Shown here: positions 1 to 14,805 of the stretch, piece by piece
Layout: each line of letters begins with the position of its first letter
How positions within the stretch are numbered: position 1 is the stretch's first letter
Source of the DNA: Salpingoeca rosetta
Taxonomy: Eukaryota > Protista > Choanoflagellata
Assembly (NCBI GenBank): GCA_033442325.1
Contig: JAWQFM010000015.1
Span: forward strand, 250,843-314,842
DNA length: 64,000 bases
Reading direction: 5' to 3'
Notes under the pieces: generated by a model
Seen by the model: only the letters and a program-made list of their open reading frames with translations
What the model was told of the DNA's origin: nothing
The model's database searches: none
Made by a program: the position numbers and the translations under genes

Positions 1-1693
1 GCTTGCCCTGCAGCCAAGACGTGTCATTGTGTCAGTAAGCAATTCCGACGTAGGCATCAATGCGCTTCACCAGATGCACAAGACGCGCAAACAGAAGCGC
101 AAACGCAACACATGTACACACAAGCAACACAAAAACAACAAACAAATGCACAAACACACACACACACAAAACAAATGCACAAACACAACAAACAAACACA
201 CACACACAAACAAACAAGCAAACAAACAAACAAACAAACACACAAACATACACACAAACAAACAAATGCACAGCAGGAACACGAGCTCGCACACCTTCTG
301 GCCTGCATCTGCGCCCTGGCCCTTCTTGCCCTTGTTCTTGCGACCCTTCTTGCCCTTCTTGCCGCGCTGGCCCGGCAGCGCGTCCTCGTCGCCCTCACCA
401 GCATCGGCCGCCGCCTTCACGGGGTCTGGCGGCGCAACCGTCTCAACAACGCCGCTGCTCGACATCACAATTTGCCGCCGTGGGCCCGTCGGGGCAGGCG
501 CAGCCGTGCTGCCGGTGTCATCGTTGTTGTCGTCTTCCTTGCCGCGGGACTTGCGGTTGCGGCGGCTCTTGCCCTTCTTCTTCTGCCCGGGCAGTGGCGC
601 CTCGCCGGCCTCATCTGCTGCTGCTGGTGCTGTTGTTGTTGCTTGTGCTGTTGCTGGCTGCTGACCCTCTGCCGCCTGCTTCTCCTGCTGCTTCGGCTTC
701 TGCTTGCGCTGTTTGCGGGTCTTCTTGCTGCCCTCACCACCCTGCTGCTGCTGCTGCTGTTGGTCGACAGCAACGTCCTCCACGCGATCCTCCTTCGACG
801 ACAGCGTGATGTGCTTCTTCGGGCCCTGCTGCTGCTGTTGCTGCTGTGGTTGTTGTTGCGCGTCGTATGCGTCCACGGGTCTGCCCTGCGGCGCCTCATC
901 GCCAGCAGGACCGCCACGGCCCCGACCGCGACCACGCCCACGGCCCCGCCCCATCGGCCGACCACCGGGGCCACCGGGGCCACCTGGACCACCAGGGCCG
1001 TACCCGCGCCCGCGCCCGTAAGGGTAGCCGCGGCCCCGTCCAAAGCCGCGTGGCATGAACGAGGGCAGCTCCTCGTCAAACTGGCGCGCGTCAAAGGAGA
1101 CCTCGCGCATGCGCGTGTCAATCTCCTGGATGGACTGCAGGCGGTCGCGCGCAAGCTTCAGCGCAGACTCCGCAAGCACAAACGCCCGGTCAACGCTCTC
1201 CTGCCACATGAAACGGTTGAGTGTGTGTGTGTGTGTGTAGTGAGTGAGTGAGTGAGTGAGTGAGTGAGTGTGAGTGAGTGAATGTGAGTGTGAGTGAATG
1301 AATGAGTGAGTGAGTGTGTGTGAGTGAGCAAGGTGTACGCCACTCGTGCGCTATCTGTCACGGCGAGTGTAGAACAATATGCATGAGTGCGTGCGTGTTA
1401 CCTGTGAGCCGATCATCTCGGCGCCCTCGCCGTCCCTGATGCGGATGCGCAGGACGCCCGACTGGTCAATCAGCCGCTGGATCGTCGCGCCGTTCTTCCC
1501 AATAAACGGGCCAATGTCTTGCCTGCAAGCCAGGGATATTTGGGGGGGGGGGAGGAAGGAAAGGTGCAGTGAGGGATGTGGGTGTGGGAAGGCGAAGGCG
1601 TTTACGAGGAGCGAGCGACCATGGGTGGGGGGAAGAAAGACGCACAGACACGAGCAACACAGGCACACGACAACACCAACAACAAGAAATCCC

Positions 1694-1767
<74 letters not shown>

Positions 1768-3016
1768 ACATGCATCAAACGTACTCGTCGAGCGGGAAGA
1801 CGCGCTTGACAATGGTCATGGCGGCGGTGGCGTAGTCGAGGCCCTCCTTTGTCTTGGCACGCACCATCACCGACGCCGATGAGCCCGCAGGGTCGCGGTT
1901 AATCACCACCCGGTCAACCTCGGGGTGCGACTCCACGTGGCTCACGTAGCTGCCCTTCTGCTCGCACGTGCGCAGGCACCAAAGGGAATACAAGCATTGT
2001 GATGTGAGGTGAAGACGATGGTGGTAAAGGTGGCACAGCGGCGAGAGCGTGTGTGTGTATGTGTGTGTGCGTGTGTGTATGTGTGTGTGCGTGTGTGTGT
2101 GTGCGCACGCATCGTCTGTGCGTGTGTGTGCTAACCGGGCCAATGGCGAGCGAAACAAATTCGCGGGGAATGTCGAATGTGTGTGTCAGCATGTTCAGCG
2201 ACTCCTGCAATCGAAAGTGACACGCAAGCAACACAACAATGTCAGCGCTGCTTGTGTGTGTGTGCTTGTGTGTGTGTGTGTGCTTGTGTGCTTGTGTGTG
2301 TGTGTGTGCTTATGTGTGTGTGCTTATGTGTGTGTGTGTGTGTGCAGACCTGCTGGCGCTGGGCGATGGACTCGAGGAACCGCTGCTTGTCGGCGTGGAT
2401 TTGAAGCTGTCAATGAACACAGAAGGTAGATACAAACACACCCCCCCCCCACACACACACGACAAGCAAGGGGCAGTCAACGAAGCGTGAGGCAACAAAA
2501 TTAACTGGCAAGGCGCAAGAGGTTCAAATAGGGATGCCGTGCACATGCGTGTCACGTACGCGGCGAAGGAAGTCGTTCATGACCAGCTGTGATTTGTTGA
2601 TCGCCTCCCGGTTGCCCTAAGGAAACACACACGCGCATACAGGAAACACATGCACGTGCACGGTTATGCTGTGAGCAAACCCGCAACGCAAGTCGGGATG
2701 AAGTCGGGATGAAAACGACAAAGCCCTGTCTTTCTCTTGACGATGCATGTATGCACACGCGAAGAGGCAGTGCGCAATGTGAAAGAAGCGAGTGAGCGCG
2801 GAACTTACGACGAGGACCCAGATTGGCTGGGCGCCGGGCGGGGTTTCGACCTGCACCGCCACCAGGCCGCACAGTGCCCGCAGATCCTCCTTGATCGCCT
2901 CGTCGCTCCTGTCGAAGCACAACACACACGCACGAAGAGCACAGCATTGTGAGCCTAACAAACACTCGACATTGAGTGAATACGTGGGTATGTGTGTGTG
3001 TGTGTGTGCGCGTGCA

Positions 3017-3048
<32 letters not shown>

Positions 3049-4310
3049 ATTGACGTACGCGGCCTGTACGAGCGTTGGCGCAAGGGCGACGTCGTGGCGG
3101 GCGAGCGTCTCCGGGTTGAACGCCGTGCTGCAATCATGCACGAAACACAACATGAAAAGACACACACACACACACATACACACGCGATACTTTGGTGAGT
3201 GGATGCGACAACAACTGCTCAGCAGCGCGTAGTCAAAGCGCGATACACTCTTGTGTTGTCGACAGCATGCGTGCAGGAGCACGCAATGCGCGTGCTTGCG
3301 GCGGCGGCTTACTTGTCGTTTGCCATGCGAACACGGCCGGGCTCCACCCACTCGTTGAAGCTCTCATCAAAGCCAGCGTACGTCACCAGCAGCAGCTGCA
3401 AGAGTGACACGGCAGCACGAGACAGTGGCACACATGCAAAACGCACGCTTGCGTGAGTAAAGAACGTGAGAGCGAAGCAAGCACAGGCAGGATGGCAGGC
3501 TGCACATTCATTCAACCACGGGTGTGAGGTGAGCAGTTGCAGCGTGTTGCACCACGTGACTGACCATGCTGGGGCCGTCGCCACGGACTTCAACGATGCT
3601 GGCACGCGCCCAGCACGGCGGGATGTTGGCGTCGACATAGTACAGCACCTGGTGATTCGAGAAATGCTCAAGCATAAGCAGAATGCGCGTCGACACAAAG
3701 GGCACGTTGACACAAAGATATGCACACACACGTACTCGGCTTATAGGCAAGTACCTACGAACAAACGCACAAGCGAACAAAGGTACAAACAACAACCACG
3801 CCAGGACACACACACACACACACATGTGCACGTACGTCGACTTTCTGGCCTGGGACAGCCTTGAGGTCCTCATGGGGCGGCGTTGTGCGGACATGTGCCA
3901 GGGGCACTGACTGGGGCTGGCGCCAGCTACAGGAGCCACAACAACAACAAACAACCACAAGTAGCCACAGCCCACAAAGCAACAGGACACGCAACGGAGT
4001 GAGCAAAAGCACGCGCGCGGGGCATCGACGCTCTTGCAACGCTAAACAACAGGCGCAACCAGACGCTTGCACACCACGCCACAACGCACTTGTTGTCGAA
4101 GACGATGGTGGCATCGTCCTTGCTCCACTTTGTGATGGTTGCCTGTCGTTCACAACGGAGAGTTGTCGCGGGTTCAGTCAATAGCGCGGGAAATGAGTCA
4201 ACGCGATCGGTTCATGCAGACCATGGCAGAACACAAACAAATTCGCTGCAACCACCACCTACCGGGAAATAGCCCCCAATCTCGGGGTCGAACACCTCGA
4301 CGCGAAGCAT
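1..4310 (-). CDS. FMR1: Fragile X protein family (FMRP/FXR1-like) RNA-binding protein: two Agenet/Tudor domains, KH domains, RGG-like region; multi-exon, 3' end lies beyond the window start
   Basis: Spliced translation from ATG 4308-4310: MLRVEVFDPEIGGYFP|ATITKWSKDDATIVFDN|WRQPQSVPLAHVRTTPPHEDLKAVPGQKVD|VLYYVDANIPPCWARASIVEVRGD|LLVTYAGFDESFNEWVE...REFVSLAIGP|KGSYV...QDIGPFIGKNGATIQRLIDQSGVLRIRI...ESVDRAFVL...GRGRGYPYGRGRG. This matches by eye the FMR1 motifs ([51 protein letters not shown]). GT-AG introns keep the frame at the junctions checked. The last intron seen ends at an acceptor near position 8. Confidence 0.88.
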
Positions 4311-4803: not shown

Positions 4804-5449
4804 ATGACTGGTGGCGGTGGCAGCAACAAGGTGACGGCCAGCCTGGCAGCGGCGAGGCGGAGGTTTCGACGGCTCCCAGAGCACCTGGCACAGTGCAAGC
4901 AAGAGGTGCGTGTGGGTGTTTGATAGGTAGAGGGGAGAGGGGAGTTTAGTCGTGGGTGCGTGTGATGTGTGCGACGTGTGGTGTGGTGTGTGGTGTGATG
5001 TGTGCGACGTGTGATGTGATATGCGATGCGCAACGTCATCATCACAGATATGCAAGTGTTTGTGGGTGTTCGTGGGTGCTGACCACGGCTTCCCACACGG
5101 TGCAGGCGTCAACGTATGCCAAGTGCATTGAAGGGAACGTTTCTGGTGTGCAGAAGGACATGTGTGCGCAAGAGTTTTCTCGCTTGCTGGCCTGCGTCAA
5201 AGCAGCTGCGGTACGTGTGCCATGAACATGGGCGTGTGTGCGAGCGTGTGTTGTTGTGCGTGTGCGAGCGTGTGCATTTTTGTGAGTGTGAGTGCATTGT
5301 GTATGCGTGTATGCGTGTGTGTACGTGTGTGTATGTGTGTCTGTGTACAAACGAGTGAAACTGTGCTTCCCCAACCAGCCATTTTCTCACATGGCAGCGC
5401 GCCATGCTTCACGACACTTAACACGCTCGTTTTGCAGGCCAAGAAGTGA
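4804..5449 (+). CDS. NDUFAF8: NDUFAF8-like twin CX9C mitochondrial complex I assembly microprotein, 72 aa, 3 exons (4804-4905, 5106-5210, 5438-5449)
   Basis: MTGGGGSNKVTASLAAARRRFRRLPEHLAQCKQE|ASTYAKCIEGNVSGVQKDMCAQEFSRLLACVKAAA|AKK*. Two exact CX9C motifs and phase-0 GT-AG introns. Resembles NDUFAF8 (RLRAFPERLAAC..A..Y..C..KD.C..EF..L..C...AAKK). Confidence 0.85.
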
Positions 5450-12009: not shown

Positions 12010-13076
12010 CTATCCTCCTTGTCCTTGCTCTCCTCCTCCATGTTCTGTCTCCCCTCCTCCCTGCTGCTGCTGCTGTTCAGGCAGAAGCTTTGGGTCACGG
12101 CGCGTCTTGCGTTTTGGCCGCGGGGCGTTGGGGTTTTCGTTAACGTAGAACAGCTTGAGCAAGTTGATGGCCCGCGTGCGCATGGGCCCGGCCTCCAGCT
12201 GCAACTTGGGCAGGCCGTCTGGCGTCTCGCACTGCAGCAGTGCCGTGTGTCATGCAATGCATTCATGGTGATGATTGGTGGTGATTTGTGGTGATTGTGG
12301 TGATGCTTGAGCGTTTGAGCGTCTACAGTGGTAGACTCAAACAGGCAAATAAGAACAAAGCAGTGCAAGCACACACACACACAATAACAACAGCTGCACA
12401 CTCACTAACACACACATGCACGCGCGCGCACACACGCACAAGGATGCACACCGTACCGTGGCAACGTCCATGGTGGAGCCGCAGCCGCCGAACCGATCAT
12501 TGTGGCAGCCAAACACGACTCTTGTGACCCCGAGCAGGCGCAGCGCATAGGCACACATCACGCACGGTTCAACCGTTACGTAGAGCGTGCAACTGGCTAC
12601 AATATCCTTGGCCTTTTCCACATCTCCGCCGCACCTCGCAACACAGTCGTCAAAGGCAACCAGCTCTGTTCCCACATACATGTGCATGTGTTGGGGGTTG
12701 CGGAGTGCGATAGGCGTGAAGGGATGTCCACGAAGGATACAGAGACAGACGTCGAGGCAAAGAGCGGGAGAGGGATAAAGACAGAGAGGGAGACACACAC
12801 ACACACAGACACACACACACAGACACACACAGAAACGCACACAGAGCGACACTCACTCACTCTCACGCAAACATGCACACACACTGCTCACTCTCACACA
12901 AACATGCACGCACACATACAACAAGCCGTACCTGCGTGGCGGGTAGCGTTGTGCTCAATGTTCGTTTGGTTGCGCCCTGCTGCTTGTACGTTGCCGTTGT
13001 CATCCACAAACACGCAGCCAACAGGCACCTCACCCTCAGCCAGCGCACGCTGCGCCTCAGCCACCGCCGCCTCCAT
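12010..13076 (-). CDS. ADAT2: tRNA-specific adenosine-34 deaminase catalytic subunit (ADAT2/Tad2)
   Basis: [24 protein letters not shown]...NATRHA|E (HAE split by an intron), [11 protein letters not shown] (PCxxC), [32 protein letters not shown]. The start codon position is slightly uncertain. Confidence 0.93.
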
Positions 13077-13275
13077 CACTCTGCTGAAAATTACCTACAT
13101 TGCCCAACACTTTTCTACAACCACCACAACAAGCACAACAACAACAACAAGCACAACAACGACAAGCACAACCATCCACCACTAACCAAACCTTCAACCT
13201 CCTCCTCCTCCTCCTCACCACCTTCCCCATCTCCCCCCCCCCCAATCCCCGGTCCAATTCGGTGCGTATGAGAGG

Positions 13276-14805
13276 ATGACGACGACGATGACGACGCCGC
13301 CGCCGCGAGAGGCGCCTGCACAGGCACGAGCGCTGTTTGATCGCTTCACAATGGGCATGGTGCAAACGTTGGAAGAGTGCGAGCATGTCGTGGACATTCG
13401 GAGCAAGCCCGCAGTGCCGTGCACCAGCTCGCAAATCGCCACTTGGGAAAGCACGCACACCCACCGGCTCCCCACAGATGTCAAGGACTTCTACCTCAGC
13501 TCCAACGGCCTGCAAATTGCGTGGACCGTGCTCTTCGGCCAGCAGATCCTGCCCCTCGGGTGGCTGCACATCAACGCCCTCGGCGATCTCAAGCCCGTGT
13601 CCGCCACATCCTCGTCTGCGACTTCCATGGCTGGCACCAGCAAGGCCAGGGCCTCCAAGCTGCCAGAGGGCGTTGAGGAGTTTCTCAAGTCCACCAGCGT
13701 CGCAGATGATACCCTCACCATCAAGCGGAGGAGACACATGCCGTTCCGAGCGTTTGCCCTTTCGCCTTGCGGCACGCACGCCACCGTGTGCCTCACCTTC
13801 ACACATCCATCGCCGTCCATCTGGCTCCTGGACCGCAGCAAGACGTGGCACATGATCGCACGCACGTTCACCGAGTACTACCGCCTGATGACCCTGTACC
13901 TTGGCCTGCCGGAGTGGCAGTATGCGCTCACGACACTTGGGCCTTTGCCCGACACCCGCCGCTGGCTGCACGCCTTTGTACCCCCGCACGTCCTGCGCGA
14001 CAACGCCCACGAAAGTGGTGGCGGCAGTGGTGGCGGTGGTGGTAATCAGCACGGCAGCACTCGAGATGGTGCTTCCAATGGCAGTGCGTGGACTGTTGCG
14101 GGCAGCACGGATCGCAGCGTCAGCCCACAGGGCACAGGCACCGACCACCATCATCAACATCATCAACATCATCAACAACACCACCAACGACAACAAAACG
14201 TGGTGGGCAGCAGCACGTGGCCCAACAGGCATGGTAGCGATGGTGATGGCGATGGTGGCACCACTGTCGCTGATGGCACGGTCGGTGCACGCTCCCGGCG
14301 CACGAGGGCTCAGTCTGCACTGCCAACATCCGCGCGATCGCAGCTGCGTGGCGAAAGCAGCGGCCGATACGACGCTGCCGGCAATGGGGCGGTGGCATCA
14401 AGGCATCGCCTAAAGAGCGCTGCACCTGGGCGCTCCCGGCGAGCGTCACGTGATCACCGCGACGCAGGCGCTGTCTCCACCACCACACACGCAACCAAGT
14501 TCACCAGCGGCGGCAGCAGCGGCGGCGGTGCGAATATGGGGGCGACCGCAGCAGCGGCAGCACACACGCGACGGGCCATGTCCAAGCTGGACCTGGAGAC
14601 GGTGATGCGCCGCGTGCGCAACACCGTGGTGAGCCCATCCAAAGGTGATGGTGGTGGTGGTGGTGAGCAGCAGCACCAGCACCAGCAGCAGCAGCAGCAG
14701 CAGGTGCGGTCGAGTCAAGCACGACCGCCTCGGCCATTGAGCGGCGCGACGACACCCGGCACCACACGCACGACGTCACGCACCAGCGCCACTTCCAAGC
14801 AATAG
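13276..14805 (+). CDS. TPGS2: Tubulin polyglutamylase complex subunit 2-like (SMI1/KNR4-like domain) with long low-complexity C-terminus; intronless, 509 aa
   Basis: IATWE...LPTDVKDFYLSSNGLQIAW...PLGWLHINAL..L and IWLLDRSKTWHMIARTFTEYYRLMTLYLGLPEWQY are characteristic TPGS2 motifs. Confidence 0.87.
   Translation: MTTTMTTPPPREAPAQARALFDRFTMGMVQTLEECEHVVDIRSKPAVPCTSSQIATWESTHTHRLPTDVKDFYLSSNGLQIAWTVLFGQQILPLGWLHINALGDLKPVSATSSSATSMAGTSKARASKLPEGVEEFLKSTSVADDTLTIKRRRHMPFRAFALSPCGTHATVCLTFTHPSPSIWLLDRSKTWHMIARTFTEYYRLMTLYLGLPEWQYALTTLGPLPDTRRWLHAFVPPHVLRDNAHESGGGSGGGGGNQHGSTRDGASNGSAWTVAGSTDRSVSPQGTGTDHHHQHHQHHQQHHQRQQNVVGSSTWPNRHGSDGDGDGGTTVADGTVGARSRRTRAQSALPTSARSQLRGESSGRYDAAGNGAVASRHRLKSAAPGRSRRASRDHRDAGAVSTTTHATKFTSGGSSGGGANMGATAAAAAHTRRAMSKLDLETVMRRVRNTVVSPSKGDGGGGGEQQHQHQQQQQQQVRSSQARPPRPLSGATTPGTTRTTSRTSATSKQ

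What the first reader, a model, noticed from the sequence alone, without database searches (positions are those of the whole stretch)
1..4310. Full-architecture fragile X (FMRP/FXR) homologue in an apparently non-animal genome
Seen: after hand-splicing the short exons, the protein has tandem Agenet domains, a KH0-like linker, KH1 (LAIGP|KG, with the GxxG loop split by an intron), KH2 (IGKNGATIQRLIDQSGVLRIRI), the following helical segment and an RG-rich region, in the FMR1 order. Known: FMRP/FXR proteins are translational regulators studied mainly in animal neurons and germ line. Inference: if the host is a choanoflagellate, the complete FMRP module predates animals and neurons. The N-terminal Agenet exons are short (about 50-100 nt) and easily missed, so the gene may be annotated only as a hypothetical or KH protein.
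Basis: partly seen in the sequence, partly recalled or inferred. Interest (0 to 1): 0.78.

Follow-up and report, generated by a model that had tools for sequence, protein, structure and literature searches.

The report
Choanoflagellate fragile X protein homologue
The choanoflagellate Salpingoeca rosetta has one expressed 14-exon gene for a 756-residue protein; its first domain and second KH domain specifically resemble the human fragile X protein, so this RNA-binding regulator probably predates animals and neurons, though several domains could not be checked independently.

Summary
The gene is real. It lies on the minus strand and has 14 GT-AG exons. CDS: window 4310 down to 295, plus a last exon starting at window 7 that runs 352 nt beyond the window edge. 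RNA-seq from four studies shows the predicted junctions, and one transcript contig carries all 14 exons. The model is 756 aa, the same length as the product already annotated at this place in NCBI GCA_000188695.1 (Salpingoeca rosetta); no Pfam family is on record for it.

The host is a choanoflagellate. The window is 100% identical to that record, and the genome has many cadherins but no Wnt, TGF-beta or integrin-beta.

Two anchors are specifically FMRP-like:
- The KH2 exon's best solved relative is human FMR1 KH2 (E 1.3e-6).
- The chain E1-E3 aligns without gaps across both splice junctions to human FMRP 12-48 (0 of 20,000 shuffles reach its score).

A GPKG loop split by intron 10, a helix, an RG box and polyQ follow in FMR1 order. 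The second Agenet, KH0 and KH1 were not independently verified. FXMRP1_C_core does not match.

Overlapping windows of this scan noted this same gene on the same DNA.

Verdict: probable pre-animal FMR1/FXR homologue; a new member of a known kind.

The parts
4263..4310 (-). Exon 1 coding part (ATG at 4310; 16 codons). The 5'UTR runs up to about window 4375.
   Evidence: Joint for intron 1 (39 reads) and contig pieces reaching L004 5075. The annotated CDS start coincides with this ATG.
4090..4142 (-). Exon 2 (53 nt, ends in phase 2).
   Evidence: Joints for introns 1 and 2.
3836..3926 (-). Exon 3 (91 nt). Together with E1 and E2 it forms the FMRP-like first Agenet/Tudor stretch (residues 11-47 = window 4280..3887, introns excluded).
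   Evidence: Intron 2 joint, 55 reads. Ungapped alignment to human FMRP 12-48, raw score 71, 0 of 20,000 shuffles reach it. Peptide test P<0.0004.
3565..3648 (-). Exon 4 (84 nt), putative first half of the second Agenet.
   Evidence: Intron 4 joint. The domain label is not verified.
3313..3395 (-). Exon 5 (83 nt), putative second half of the second Agenet. It carries a Y-x-G-F-x(4)-E-W-V motif.
   Evidence: Joints for introns 4 and 5. Weak chromo-barrel/Tudor-knot hits, EAF3 and MOF, E 0.5-2.
3059..3127 (-). Exon 6 (69 nt), linker / putative start of KH0.
   Evidence: Intron 5 joint and the contig length sum.
2809..2908 (-). Exon 7 (100 nt), putative KH0.
   Evidence: Contig pieces at L004 3508-3608 and the intron 7 joint. 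No family hit.
2560..2616 (-). Exon 8 (57 nt).
   Evidence: Intron 7 joint, and the 351-nt skip that ends at window 2560.
2350..2406 (-). Exon 9 (57 nt).
   Evidence: The loose-end consensus at L004 2908 equals the exon 9 sequence; contig length sum.
2136..2204 (-). Exon 10 (69 nt): start of putative KH1; ends with LAIGP.
   Evidence: Intron 10 joint, 24 reads. The GPKG loop is completed by exon 11.
1785..1957 (-). Exon 11 (173 nt): body of putative KH1; begins with KG.
   Evidence: Joints for introns 10 and 11. Single copy in the genome. Folded alone: strand-strand-strand-helix, pLDDT 77. No HMM, PDB or fold match.
1402..1522 (-). Exon 12 (121 nt): KH2 with its GKNG loop (window 1500-1489).
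   Evidence: Pfam KH_1 E 2.4e-4, 21.3 bits. Best PDB relative is FMR1 KH2, 2qnd, E 1.3e-6, 15 of 27 identical. Single copy.
295..1200 (-). Exon 13 (906 nt): end of KH2 plus a helix (residues 336-385), the RG box (386-450, window 1050-856), two polyQ runs (window 846-826 and 762-742), and a Lys/Ala/Gly-rich disordered stretch.
   Evidence: Joints for introns 12 and 13. Composition. The RG box hits only generic RGG proteins. No relatives among 1.84 billion representatives.
8..294 (-). Intron 13 (287 nt).
   Evidence: 128 junction reads in X21 and contigs in three other runs.
1..7 (-). First 7 nt of exon 14. The exon continues outside the window to a stop at window -350..-352 (119 codons, Ala/Thr/Pro-rich), then a long 3'UTR.
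   Evidence: Locus L004 = G000:C15:250143-255342.

Best explanation
This is the single FMR1/FXR-type (fragile X related) gene of the choanoflagellate Salpingoeca rosetta.

SHOWN
- A 14-exon, minus-strand, well-expressed gene encodes a 756-residue protein.
- Its first about 385 residues are ordinary in composition, not low-complexity. They begin with a stretch homologous to the first Agenet/Tudor domain of human FMRP.
- They end with a KH domain whose closest solved relative is FMR1 KH2.
- A second GxxG loop (GPKG) lies 67 residues upstream of the KH2 loop, where KH1 should be.
- The C-terminal half is low-complexity: an RG box, two polyQ runs, and Lys-rich and Ala/Thr-rich tails.

INFERRED FROM THE FAMILY
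- The protein binds mRNA and possibly ribosomes through its KH domains.
- It binds structured or G-rich RNA through the RG box.
- It reads methylated Lys/Arg partners through the Agenet pair.
- It assembles into RNP granules through its disordered half.
- Together these would repress or time the translation of target mRNAs.

No Piwi-domain (Argonaute) gene is detectable in this genome, so the mechanism here would have to be independent of RISC. A CYFIP gene is present, so that partnership is possible.
For: GENE AND TRANSCRIPT
- GT-AG exons with consistent phases.
- Every listed RNA joint equals a predicted intron.
- One 2,219-nt contig equals the sum of all 14 exons.
- Strand-specific reads place the RNA on the minus strand.
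- The model is 756 aa, the same as the product annotated in NCBI at the same start.
- The gene is single copy.

HOMOLOGY
- Exon 12 against all PDB sequences: FMR1 KH2 ranks first, E 1.3e-6, 24.8 bits for that domain. The best single domain printed for another KH protein scores 14.8 bits, and the next whole-chain score is 26.6 bits over two domains. Pfam KH_1 E 2.4e-4.
- Chain E1-E3 against human FMRP 1-49 as printed in bioRxiv 10.1101/608331: an ungapped 36-residue alignment across both splice junctions, 11 identical, raw score 71, z 11.4. 0 of 20,000 shuffles and 0 of 6,127 real peptides of the window reach it.
- The FMRP tryptic peptide covering residues 22-40 lands on the E2|E3 junction, P<0.0004.
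- There are only two GxxG loops in residues 200-340, 67 residues apart.
- An RG box follows directly after the post-KH2 helix.

HOST
- 100% identity to the S. rosetta assembly.
- Cadherins present; Wnt, TGF-beta and integrin-beta absent.

PARTNERS
- CYFIP (FragX_IP) is present as a collinear multi-exon gene.
- No Piwi domain was found, while the tool's controls did ring.
Against: - Exon by exon, Pfam finds nothing except KH_1 on exon 12, and that is 0.2 bits under the curated cut-off.
- The FMRP-specific models Tudor_FRX1, KH_9 and FXMRP1_C_core find nothing at this locus in six-frame searches. FXMRP1_C_core also fails on the contiguous 302-residue exon 13.
- Single N-terminal exons do not stand out against the window background when searched with the human segment. 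The significant N-terminal result needs the exons chained, which I did only in a local script.
- Exons 10 and 11 (putative KH1) have no detectable relative by sequence or fold.
- The public annotation has no Pfam family on record for the full product. About a quarter of products have none, so this is weak evidence.
- No reciprocal best hit and no tree were obtained.
- The function is entirely inferred.
Confidence: 0.78

Rival explanations
1. It is a lineage-specific RNA-binding protein that combines a Royal-family (Tudor/Agenet-like) domain with KH domains and an RGG tail, but it is not an orthologue of FMR1/FXR. The resemblance would be shared domain families plus convergent order.
For: - The FMRP-specific Pfam models do not match.
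- KH1 and KH0 are unrecognisable.
- The C-terminal half has no relatives at all.
- Exon 5's nearest solved relatives are chromo-barrels, not FMRP.
- The language-model atlas places exon 12 only in generic KH clusters.
Against: - Two separate regions match FMRP itself rather than the generic families. KH2 is closer to FMR1 than to any other KH chain in the PDB.
- The N-terminal 36 residues align to FMRP without a gap across two introns, including the motif F-[ED]-N-N-W.
- To my knowledge, the order Agenet - KH - KH - RG box with this spacing occurs only in this family. This rests on established knowledge and was not tested here.
Confidence: 0.17
2. The gene model is an artefact: two neighbouring genes (a Tudor-type gene and a KH gene) wrongly joined, or spurious micro-exons.
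For: The exons are very short, and the GC-rich genome gives many chance open frames.
Against: - Junction reads support each listed intron (12 to 128 reads each in raw stranded RNA-seq).
- Introns have zero depth.
- Single assembled transcripts span exon 1 to exon 14 in independent studies.
- The length is identical to the public annotation.
Confidence: 0.02
3. The locus is animal contamination or a recent transfer from an animal.
For: None found.
Against: - It lies inside a 1.5-Mb contig of the S. rosetta assembly with 100% identity.
- Its introns are of the host's own type, (GT)n at donors and (CA)n at acceptors (notes).
- It is expressed in runs from several studies of the same organism.
- The genome lacks Wnt and TGF-beta.
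- The protein is only about 30-55% identical to human FMRP in its best stretches.
Confidence: 0.01

Closest known systems
Human FMRP (FMR1) and its paralogues FXR1 and FXR2
   Same: - An N-terminal Agenet/Tudor-type stretch: model residues 11-47 align with human 12-48 without gaps, 31% identical.
- A KH2 with a GKNG loop, 15 of 27 identical.
- A second GxxG loop one KH-length upstream.
- A helix after KH2, then an Arg/Gly-rich box.
- A long disordered C-terminus.
- By my recollection of human numbering (GKNG near residue 298), the distance from the N-terminus to KH2 is almost the same (GKNG at 303 here).
   Different: - FXMRP1_C_core is not recognisable.
- The KH2 variable loop is short.
- The RG box is of the RGRG/GPGG type; only one RGG triplet is present.
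- There are two polyQ runs and Lys-rich and Ala/Thr-rich tails with no relatives.
- There is one gene, not three.
- The organism has no neurons and no detectable Argonaute.
Single invertebrate orthologues: Drosophila dFMR1 and the Hydractinia Fmr1-like gene (Guduric-Fuchs 2004, cited in PMC4216185)
   Same: One family member per genome, as in invertebrates.
   Different: [quoted passage not shown] This gene lies outside animals.
Other Tudor-plus-KH proteins (TDRKH/Papi, AKAP1) and plant Agenet proteins
   Same: They share a Royal-family domain and/or KH domains. Exon 5 resembles chromo-barrel/Tudor-knot strands.
   Different: From established knowledge, those proteins have KH before Tudor, or Agenet without KH, and lack the RG box after a tandem KH. 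The KH2 here is closer to FMR1 than to any of them in the PDB.

Membership tests
FMR1/FXR (fragile X related) family | N-terminal first Agenet/Tudor domain with the family's own sequence | tested here: met
   - Local pairwise alignment of chain E1-E3 to printed human FMRP 1-49: ungapped, raw score 71, 0 of 20,000 shuffles and 0 of 6,127 window peptides reach it.
- Peptide test P<0.0004.
- Caveats: single exons are not significant, and Pfam Tudor_FRX1 finds nothing in six frames.
FMR1/FXR (fragile X related) family | Second Agenet domain directly after the first (tandem Agenet) | tested here: inconclusive
   - Exon 5 gives only weak Royal-family hits, E 0.5-2.
- Exon 4 gives none.
- Similarity between the two putative repeats has P about 0.03.
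- Exon-wise Pfam gives none.
FMR1/FXR (fragile X related) family | KH0 domain between the Agenet pair and KH1 | tested here: inconclusive
   - Pfam KH_9 finds nothing in six frames.
- Exon 7, and the stop-free read-through of E6, intron 6 and E7, find no relevant PDB chain.
- The exons here are 19-33 residues long, so the test has little power.
FMR1/FXR (fragile X related) family | KH1: a type-I KH domain with a GxxG loop | tested here: inconclusive
   - A GPKG loop is formed across the RNA-verified E10|E11 junction, 67 residues before the KH2 loop.
- Exons 10 and 11 have no Pfam, PDB or fold match.
- Exon 11 folded alone gives strand-strand-strand-helix. Its last three elements are compatible with the second half of a KH domain.
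FMR1/FXR (fragile X related) family | KH2 with the family's sequence | tested here: met
   - The best PDB relative of exon 12 is FMR1 KH2 (2qnd), E 1.3e-6, ahead of all other KH chains.
- Pfam KH_1 E 2.4e-4, 21.3 bits against a cut-off of 21.5 for this half-domain.
FMR1/FXR (fragile X related) family | Divergent C-terminus with Arg/Gly-rich motifs (the family definition in PMC2662490) | tested here: met
   - 11 RG dipeptides in residues 386-450, directly after the post-KH2 helix.
- This stretch hits only generic RGG proteins in the PDB.
FMR1/FXR (fragile X related) family | Pfam FXMRP1_C_core signature after KH2. It is typical of animal members; I do not treat it as defining, because the family's C-terminus is described as divergent. 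| tested here: not met
   - No hit on the contiguous 302-residue exon 13 at E up to 10.
- The only six-frame hit in the genome is elsewhere, at E 1.2.
FMR1/FXR (fragile X related) family | Reciprocal best hit and monophyly with animal FMR1/FXR | not testable with these tools
- Word searches were blank.
- The exhaustive search does not hold this proteome.
Choanoflagellate host (Salpingoeca rosetta) | Sequence identity to the reference assembly, and choanoflagellate gene content | tested here: met
   - 21,530 of 21,530 nt are identical to GCA_000188695.1 record GL832969.1.
- S. rosetta papers use that accession.
- At least 150 cadherin repeats; no Wnt, TGF-beta or integrin-beta.

The most novel reading that the evidence does not exclude
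The whole FMRP module (Agenet pair, KH0, KH1, KH2, RG box) was already assembled in the last common ancestor of choanoflagellates and animals. It may even share intron positions with human FMR1. It would work there as a RISC-independent translational regulator. The 'neuronal' fragile X protein would then be a co-opted unicellular regulator whose ancestral job can be studied by genetics in S. rosetta.
Probability: 0.55. Interest if true: 0.62.

Novelty: new member of a known kind. Interest (0 to 1): 0.5.

Why it matters
A 2013 review, citing Guduric-Fuchs 2004, states that the fragile X gene family arose in the cnidarian-bilaterian ancestor and is absent from organisms without nervous systems (PMC4216185). 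None of my searches of about 8.4 million papers and preprints linked the family to choanoflagellates or other unicellular holozoans.

An expressed, single-copy homologue in S. rosetta moves the origin of the family to before animals. It adds FMRP to the list of 'neuronal' proteins with a unicellular past.

S. rosetta is a laboratory organism with several cell types; CRISPR/Cas9 editing is used in it and many RNA-seq studies exist. The ancestral, neuron-free and apparently Argonaute-free function of an FMRP-type protein is therefore directly testable.

The surprise is moderate. Many synaptic proteins are already known from choanoflagellates, the gene model is already in the public annotation, and orthology databases that I cannot query may already group it with FMR1.

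Tried and rejected
LEFT OUT BY RULE
The full-length Pfam scan, PDB search, structure prediction, reciprocal search and tree were therefore not done. The chain of exons was used only inside local scripts (length and composition; pairwise alignment to a 49-residue human segment printed in a paper).

TRIED WITHOUT RESULT
- Pfam on each exon: only KH_1 on exon 12.
- Sequence search against the PDB: nothing for exons 3, 10 and 11; nothing relevant for exons 4 and 7 or the E6-E7 read-through. The exon 13 start gave only generic RGG hits.
- Three word searches of the 5.8-billion protein set were blank. The first two were limited to proteins of at most 747 aa, 9 short of the real 756.
- The exhaustive HMMER search with exon 13 gave no self hit and two bacterial low-complexity proteins, P0001 and P0002.
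- The metagenome scan with the KH2 exon returned one contig, L005. It is a generic tandem-KH gene on which no other exon matches, so I dropped it.
- Six-frame Pfam searches of the genome with Tudor_FRX1, KH_9 and FXMRP1_C_core gave no hit at the locus.
- Protein atlas: nothing for exon 11; generic KH_1 at 0.8 for exon 12.
- Exon 11 folded alone reached pLDDT 77. Foldseek (best E 0.35) and VIA-align (best Z 4.7) gave only common strand-strand-strand-helix arrangements.
- tblastn of the printed human segments against the window, exon by exon: the exons do not rise above background.
- Supplements of three holozoan comparative papers do not mention FMR1, FXR or Agenet.
- My recollection of human FMR1 exon sizes could not be checked.

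REJECTED
- A chimeric gene model and animal contamination (see the rival explanations).

OTHER


Full report
1. THE GENE

The finding lies on the minus strand. Reading window 4400-1 in three frames gives a chain of short open segments. Anchoring them and inspecting the borders gives 13 exons between window 4310 (ATG) and 295. All have GT-AG borders, the phases are consistent, and there is no stop over 637 codons. Introns are 120-262 nt.

The frame of exon 13 runs on into microsatellite-derived nonsense, but there is a good donor at window 294 (AAG|gtgtgc). I located the window in its genome (G000:C15:250843-314842; 55.4 Mb in 68 contigs) and fetched the left flank. An acceptor (ctgcag|GGC) opens a last exon at window 7. 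It runs 119 codons to a stop at window -350..-352. The full model is 756 residues.

2. RNA EVIDENCE

Many runs of one much-studied organism hold about 45% of the sampled words of the locus, which is roughly the exonic share. I laid one raw stranded RNA-seq run and the contigs of three other studies on L004 (L004 coordinate = window + 700).

- The listed joints equal introns 1, 2, 4, 5, 7, 10, 11, 12 and 13 exactly, with 12-128 junction reads each in the raw run and CT..AC ends on the plus strand.
- Exons 10, 9 and 8 appear as a 351-nt skip with exon 9 between them.
- Depth in the introns is zero.
- First mates lie on the plus strand, as expected for an RNA from the minus strand.
- Contig X12 record 3 (2,219 nt) is exactly the sum of part of exon 14, exons 13 to 2, and exon 1 with 62 nt of 5'UTR.

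So the Agenet-type exons and the KH exons are in one mRNA.

3. THE HOST

A look-up of the neighbouring single-exon gene (window 13276-14802) found it in NCBI GCA_000188695.1, record GL832969.1. That locus is 100% identical to window 3276-24805 over 21,530 nt. Salpingoeca rosetta papers use this accession.

Independently, the genome has at least 150 cadherin repeats in giant open frames, but no Wnt, TGF-beta or integrin-beta. From established knowledge, this is the gene content of a choanoflagellate and not that of an animal or of Capsaspora.

The same look-up shows that the public annotation already calls a minus-strand gene ending at my ATG, with a product of 756 residues and no Pfam family on record.

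4. WHAT THE PROTEIN IS

Exon by exon, the tools are weak because the exons encode 16-57 residues.
- Pfam finds only KH_1 on exon 12 (E 2.4e-4, 21.3 bits).
- Against all PDB sequences, exon 12's best relative is human FMR1 KH2 (2qnd). The E-value is 1.3e-6, and 15 of 27 residues are identical around the GKNG loop. That domain scores 24.8 bits. The best single domain printed for another KH protein scores 14.8 bits, and the next whole-chain score is 26.6 bits over two domains.
- Exon 5 gives weak chromo-barrel/Tudor-knot hits.
- Exons 3, 4, 7, 10 and 11 give nothing relevant.
- The FMRP-specific Pfam models Tudor_FRX1, KH_9 and FXMRP1_C_core find nothing at the locus in six frames. The same tool readily finds the multi-exon CYFIP gene.
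- FXMRP1_C_core also fails on the contiguous exon 13.

To test the N-terminus I used short human reference segments printed in papers: FMRP residues 1-49 (bioRxiv 10.1101/608331) and tryptic peptides (PMC6399764).
- Exon by exon these do not single out the exons in the 64-kb window.
- Chained in a local script, the result is different. Model residues 11-47 align to human 12-48 without any gap across both splice junctions. There are 11 identities, including F-[ED]-N-N-W. The raw score is 71 and z is 11.4. None of 20,000 shuffles (maximum 50) and none of 6,127 real 64-residue peptides of the window (maximum 34) reach it.
- The peptide for human residues 22-40 lands on the E2|E3 junction (P<0.0004).

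So the two ends of the folded half are each specifically FMRP-like, and they stand in the right order.

Between them, the only other GxxG loop (GPKG) is formed across the E10|E11 junction, 67 residues before GKNG. After KH2 come a 50-residue charged helix, an RG box (11 RG in 65 residues), two polyQ runs, a Lys/Ala/Gly-rich stretch and an Ala/Thr/Pro-rich tail. This half has no relatives among 1.84 billion representative proteins.

The second Agenet, KH0 and KH1 remain unverified. Folding exon 11 alone gave a fair model, but the fold searches were uninformative.

5. HOW IT PROBABLY WORKS

The steps shown are the gene, its expression, single-copy status, and homology at two anchors. Everything else is inferred from the family:
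- RNA and possibly ribosome binding by the KH pair;
- binding of structured RNA by the RG box;
- methyl-lysine/arginine reading by the Agenet pair;
- granule formation by the disordered half;
- the net effect being translational control.

Two context checks constrain this. A CYFIP gene exists, so that interaction is testable. No Piwi-domain gene was found although the tool's controls rang. An Argonaute-linked mode is therefore unlikely here, with the caveat that a six-frame blank does not prove absence.

6. KNOWN OR NEW

A 2013 review places the origin of the family in the cnidarian-bilaterian ancestor and says it is absent from organisms without a nervous system. None of my full-text searches, and none of the supplements of three holozoan comparative studies or a 2025 survey of Tudor genes in Holozoa, mention the family in unicellular relatives of animals.

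The gene model itself is public. Orthology databases that I cannot query may already group it with FMR1.

I class it as a new member of a known kind. Confidence in homology is about 0.8. Interest is moderate (0.5): it corrects a textbook statement and offers a tractable system, but it matches the established pattern that 'neuronal' proteins predate animals.

7. LIMITS

- No reciprocal best hit, no tree and no full-length domain or structure analysis were run.
- The intron-position match with human FMR1 (48/53 nt here against a recalled 51/53 nt) is an untested recollection.
- Overlapping windows of this scan noted the same gene on the same DNA (s1-433372 and s1-434623).

Noticed in passing
window 741-855 (polyQ part of exon 13): Reads and contigs pile up and break here. 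There are many loose ends. G>T at window 848 appears in most reads of all four runs. RNA reads show a net 63-nt in-frame skip (window 763..829, with TTGT between) supported by about 107 reads, but with only 21-22 nt of anchor. This is probably cross-mapping from other CAG/CAA-repeat genes; a length variant of the polyQ stretch is not excluded.
   Followed up: no
introns of the gene, e.g. window 1681-1762, 1210-1320, 2040-2110, 2250-2345: On the coding strand the introns carry (GT)n-type repeats just after the donor and (CA)n or (CACT)n repeats before the acceptor, with little polypyrimidine tract. This is the same architecture as first-stage notes s1-433480 and s1-432572 describe elsewhere in the window.
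   Followed up: partly
window 4804-5449 (+): A divergently transcribed small gene (72-residue product in the public annotation, no Pfam on record) starts about 430 nt from the 5' end of the FMRP-like mRNA. The two genes probably share a bidirectional promoter region.
   Followed up: no
window 13276-14805 (+) and about 12010-13078 (-): A single-exon 509-residue gene with a weak SMI1_KNR4 hit lies next to a 191-residue cytidine/dCMP deaminase-family gene (dCMP_cyt_deam_1, MafB19-deam).
   Followed up: no
G000:C36:365375-385156, C4:1896502-1914099, C24:805541-828988 and others: Giant cadherin genes: single open frames of up to 7,568 codons with dozens of cadherin repeats each.
   Followed up: no
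whole genome G000: No Piwi-domain (Argonaute) gene at E<=1e-5 in a six-frame search whose prokaryotic controls rang. A CYFIP gene is present at C1:3422460-3428031, with a second FragX_IP-like fragment at C12:1320324-1320527.
   Followed up: partly
L005:8962-9243 (metagenome contig Ga0182014_10007708): An environmental contig encodes two adjacent KH domains. The second is 55% identical to the KH2 exon over 29 residues, but no other exon of the gene matches. It is an unrelated KH protein.
   Followed up: yes
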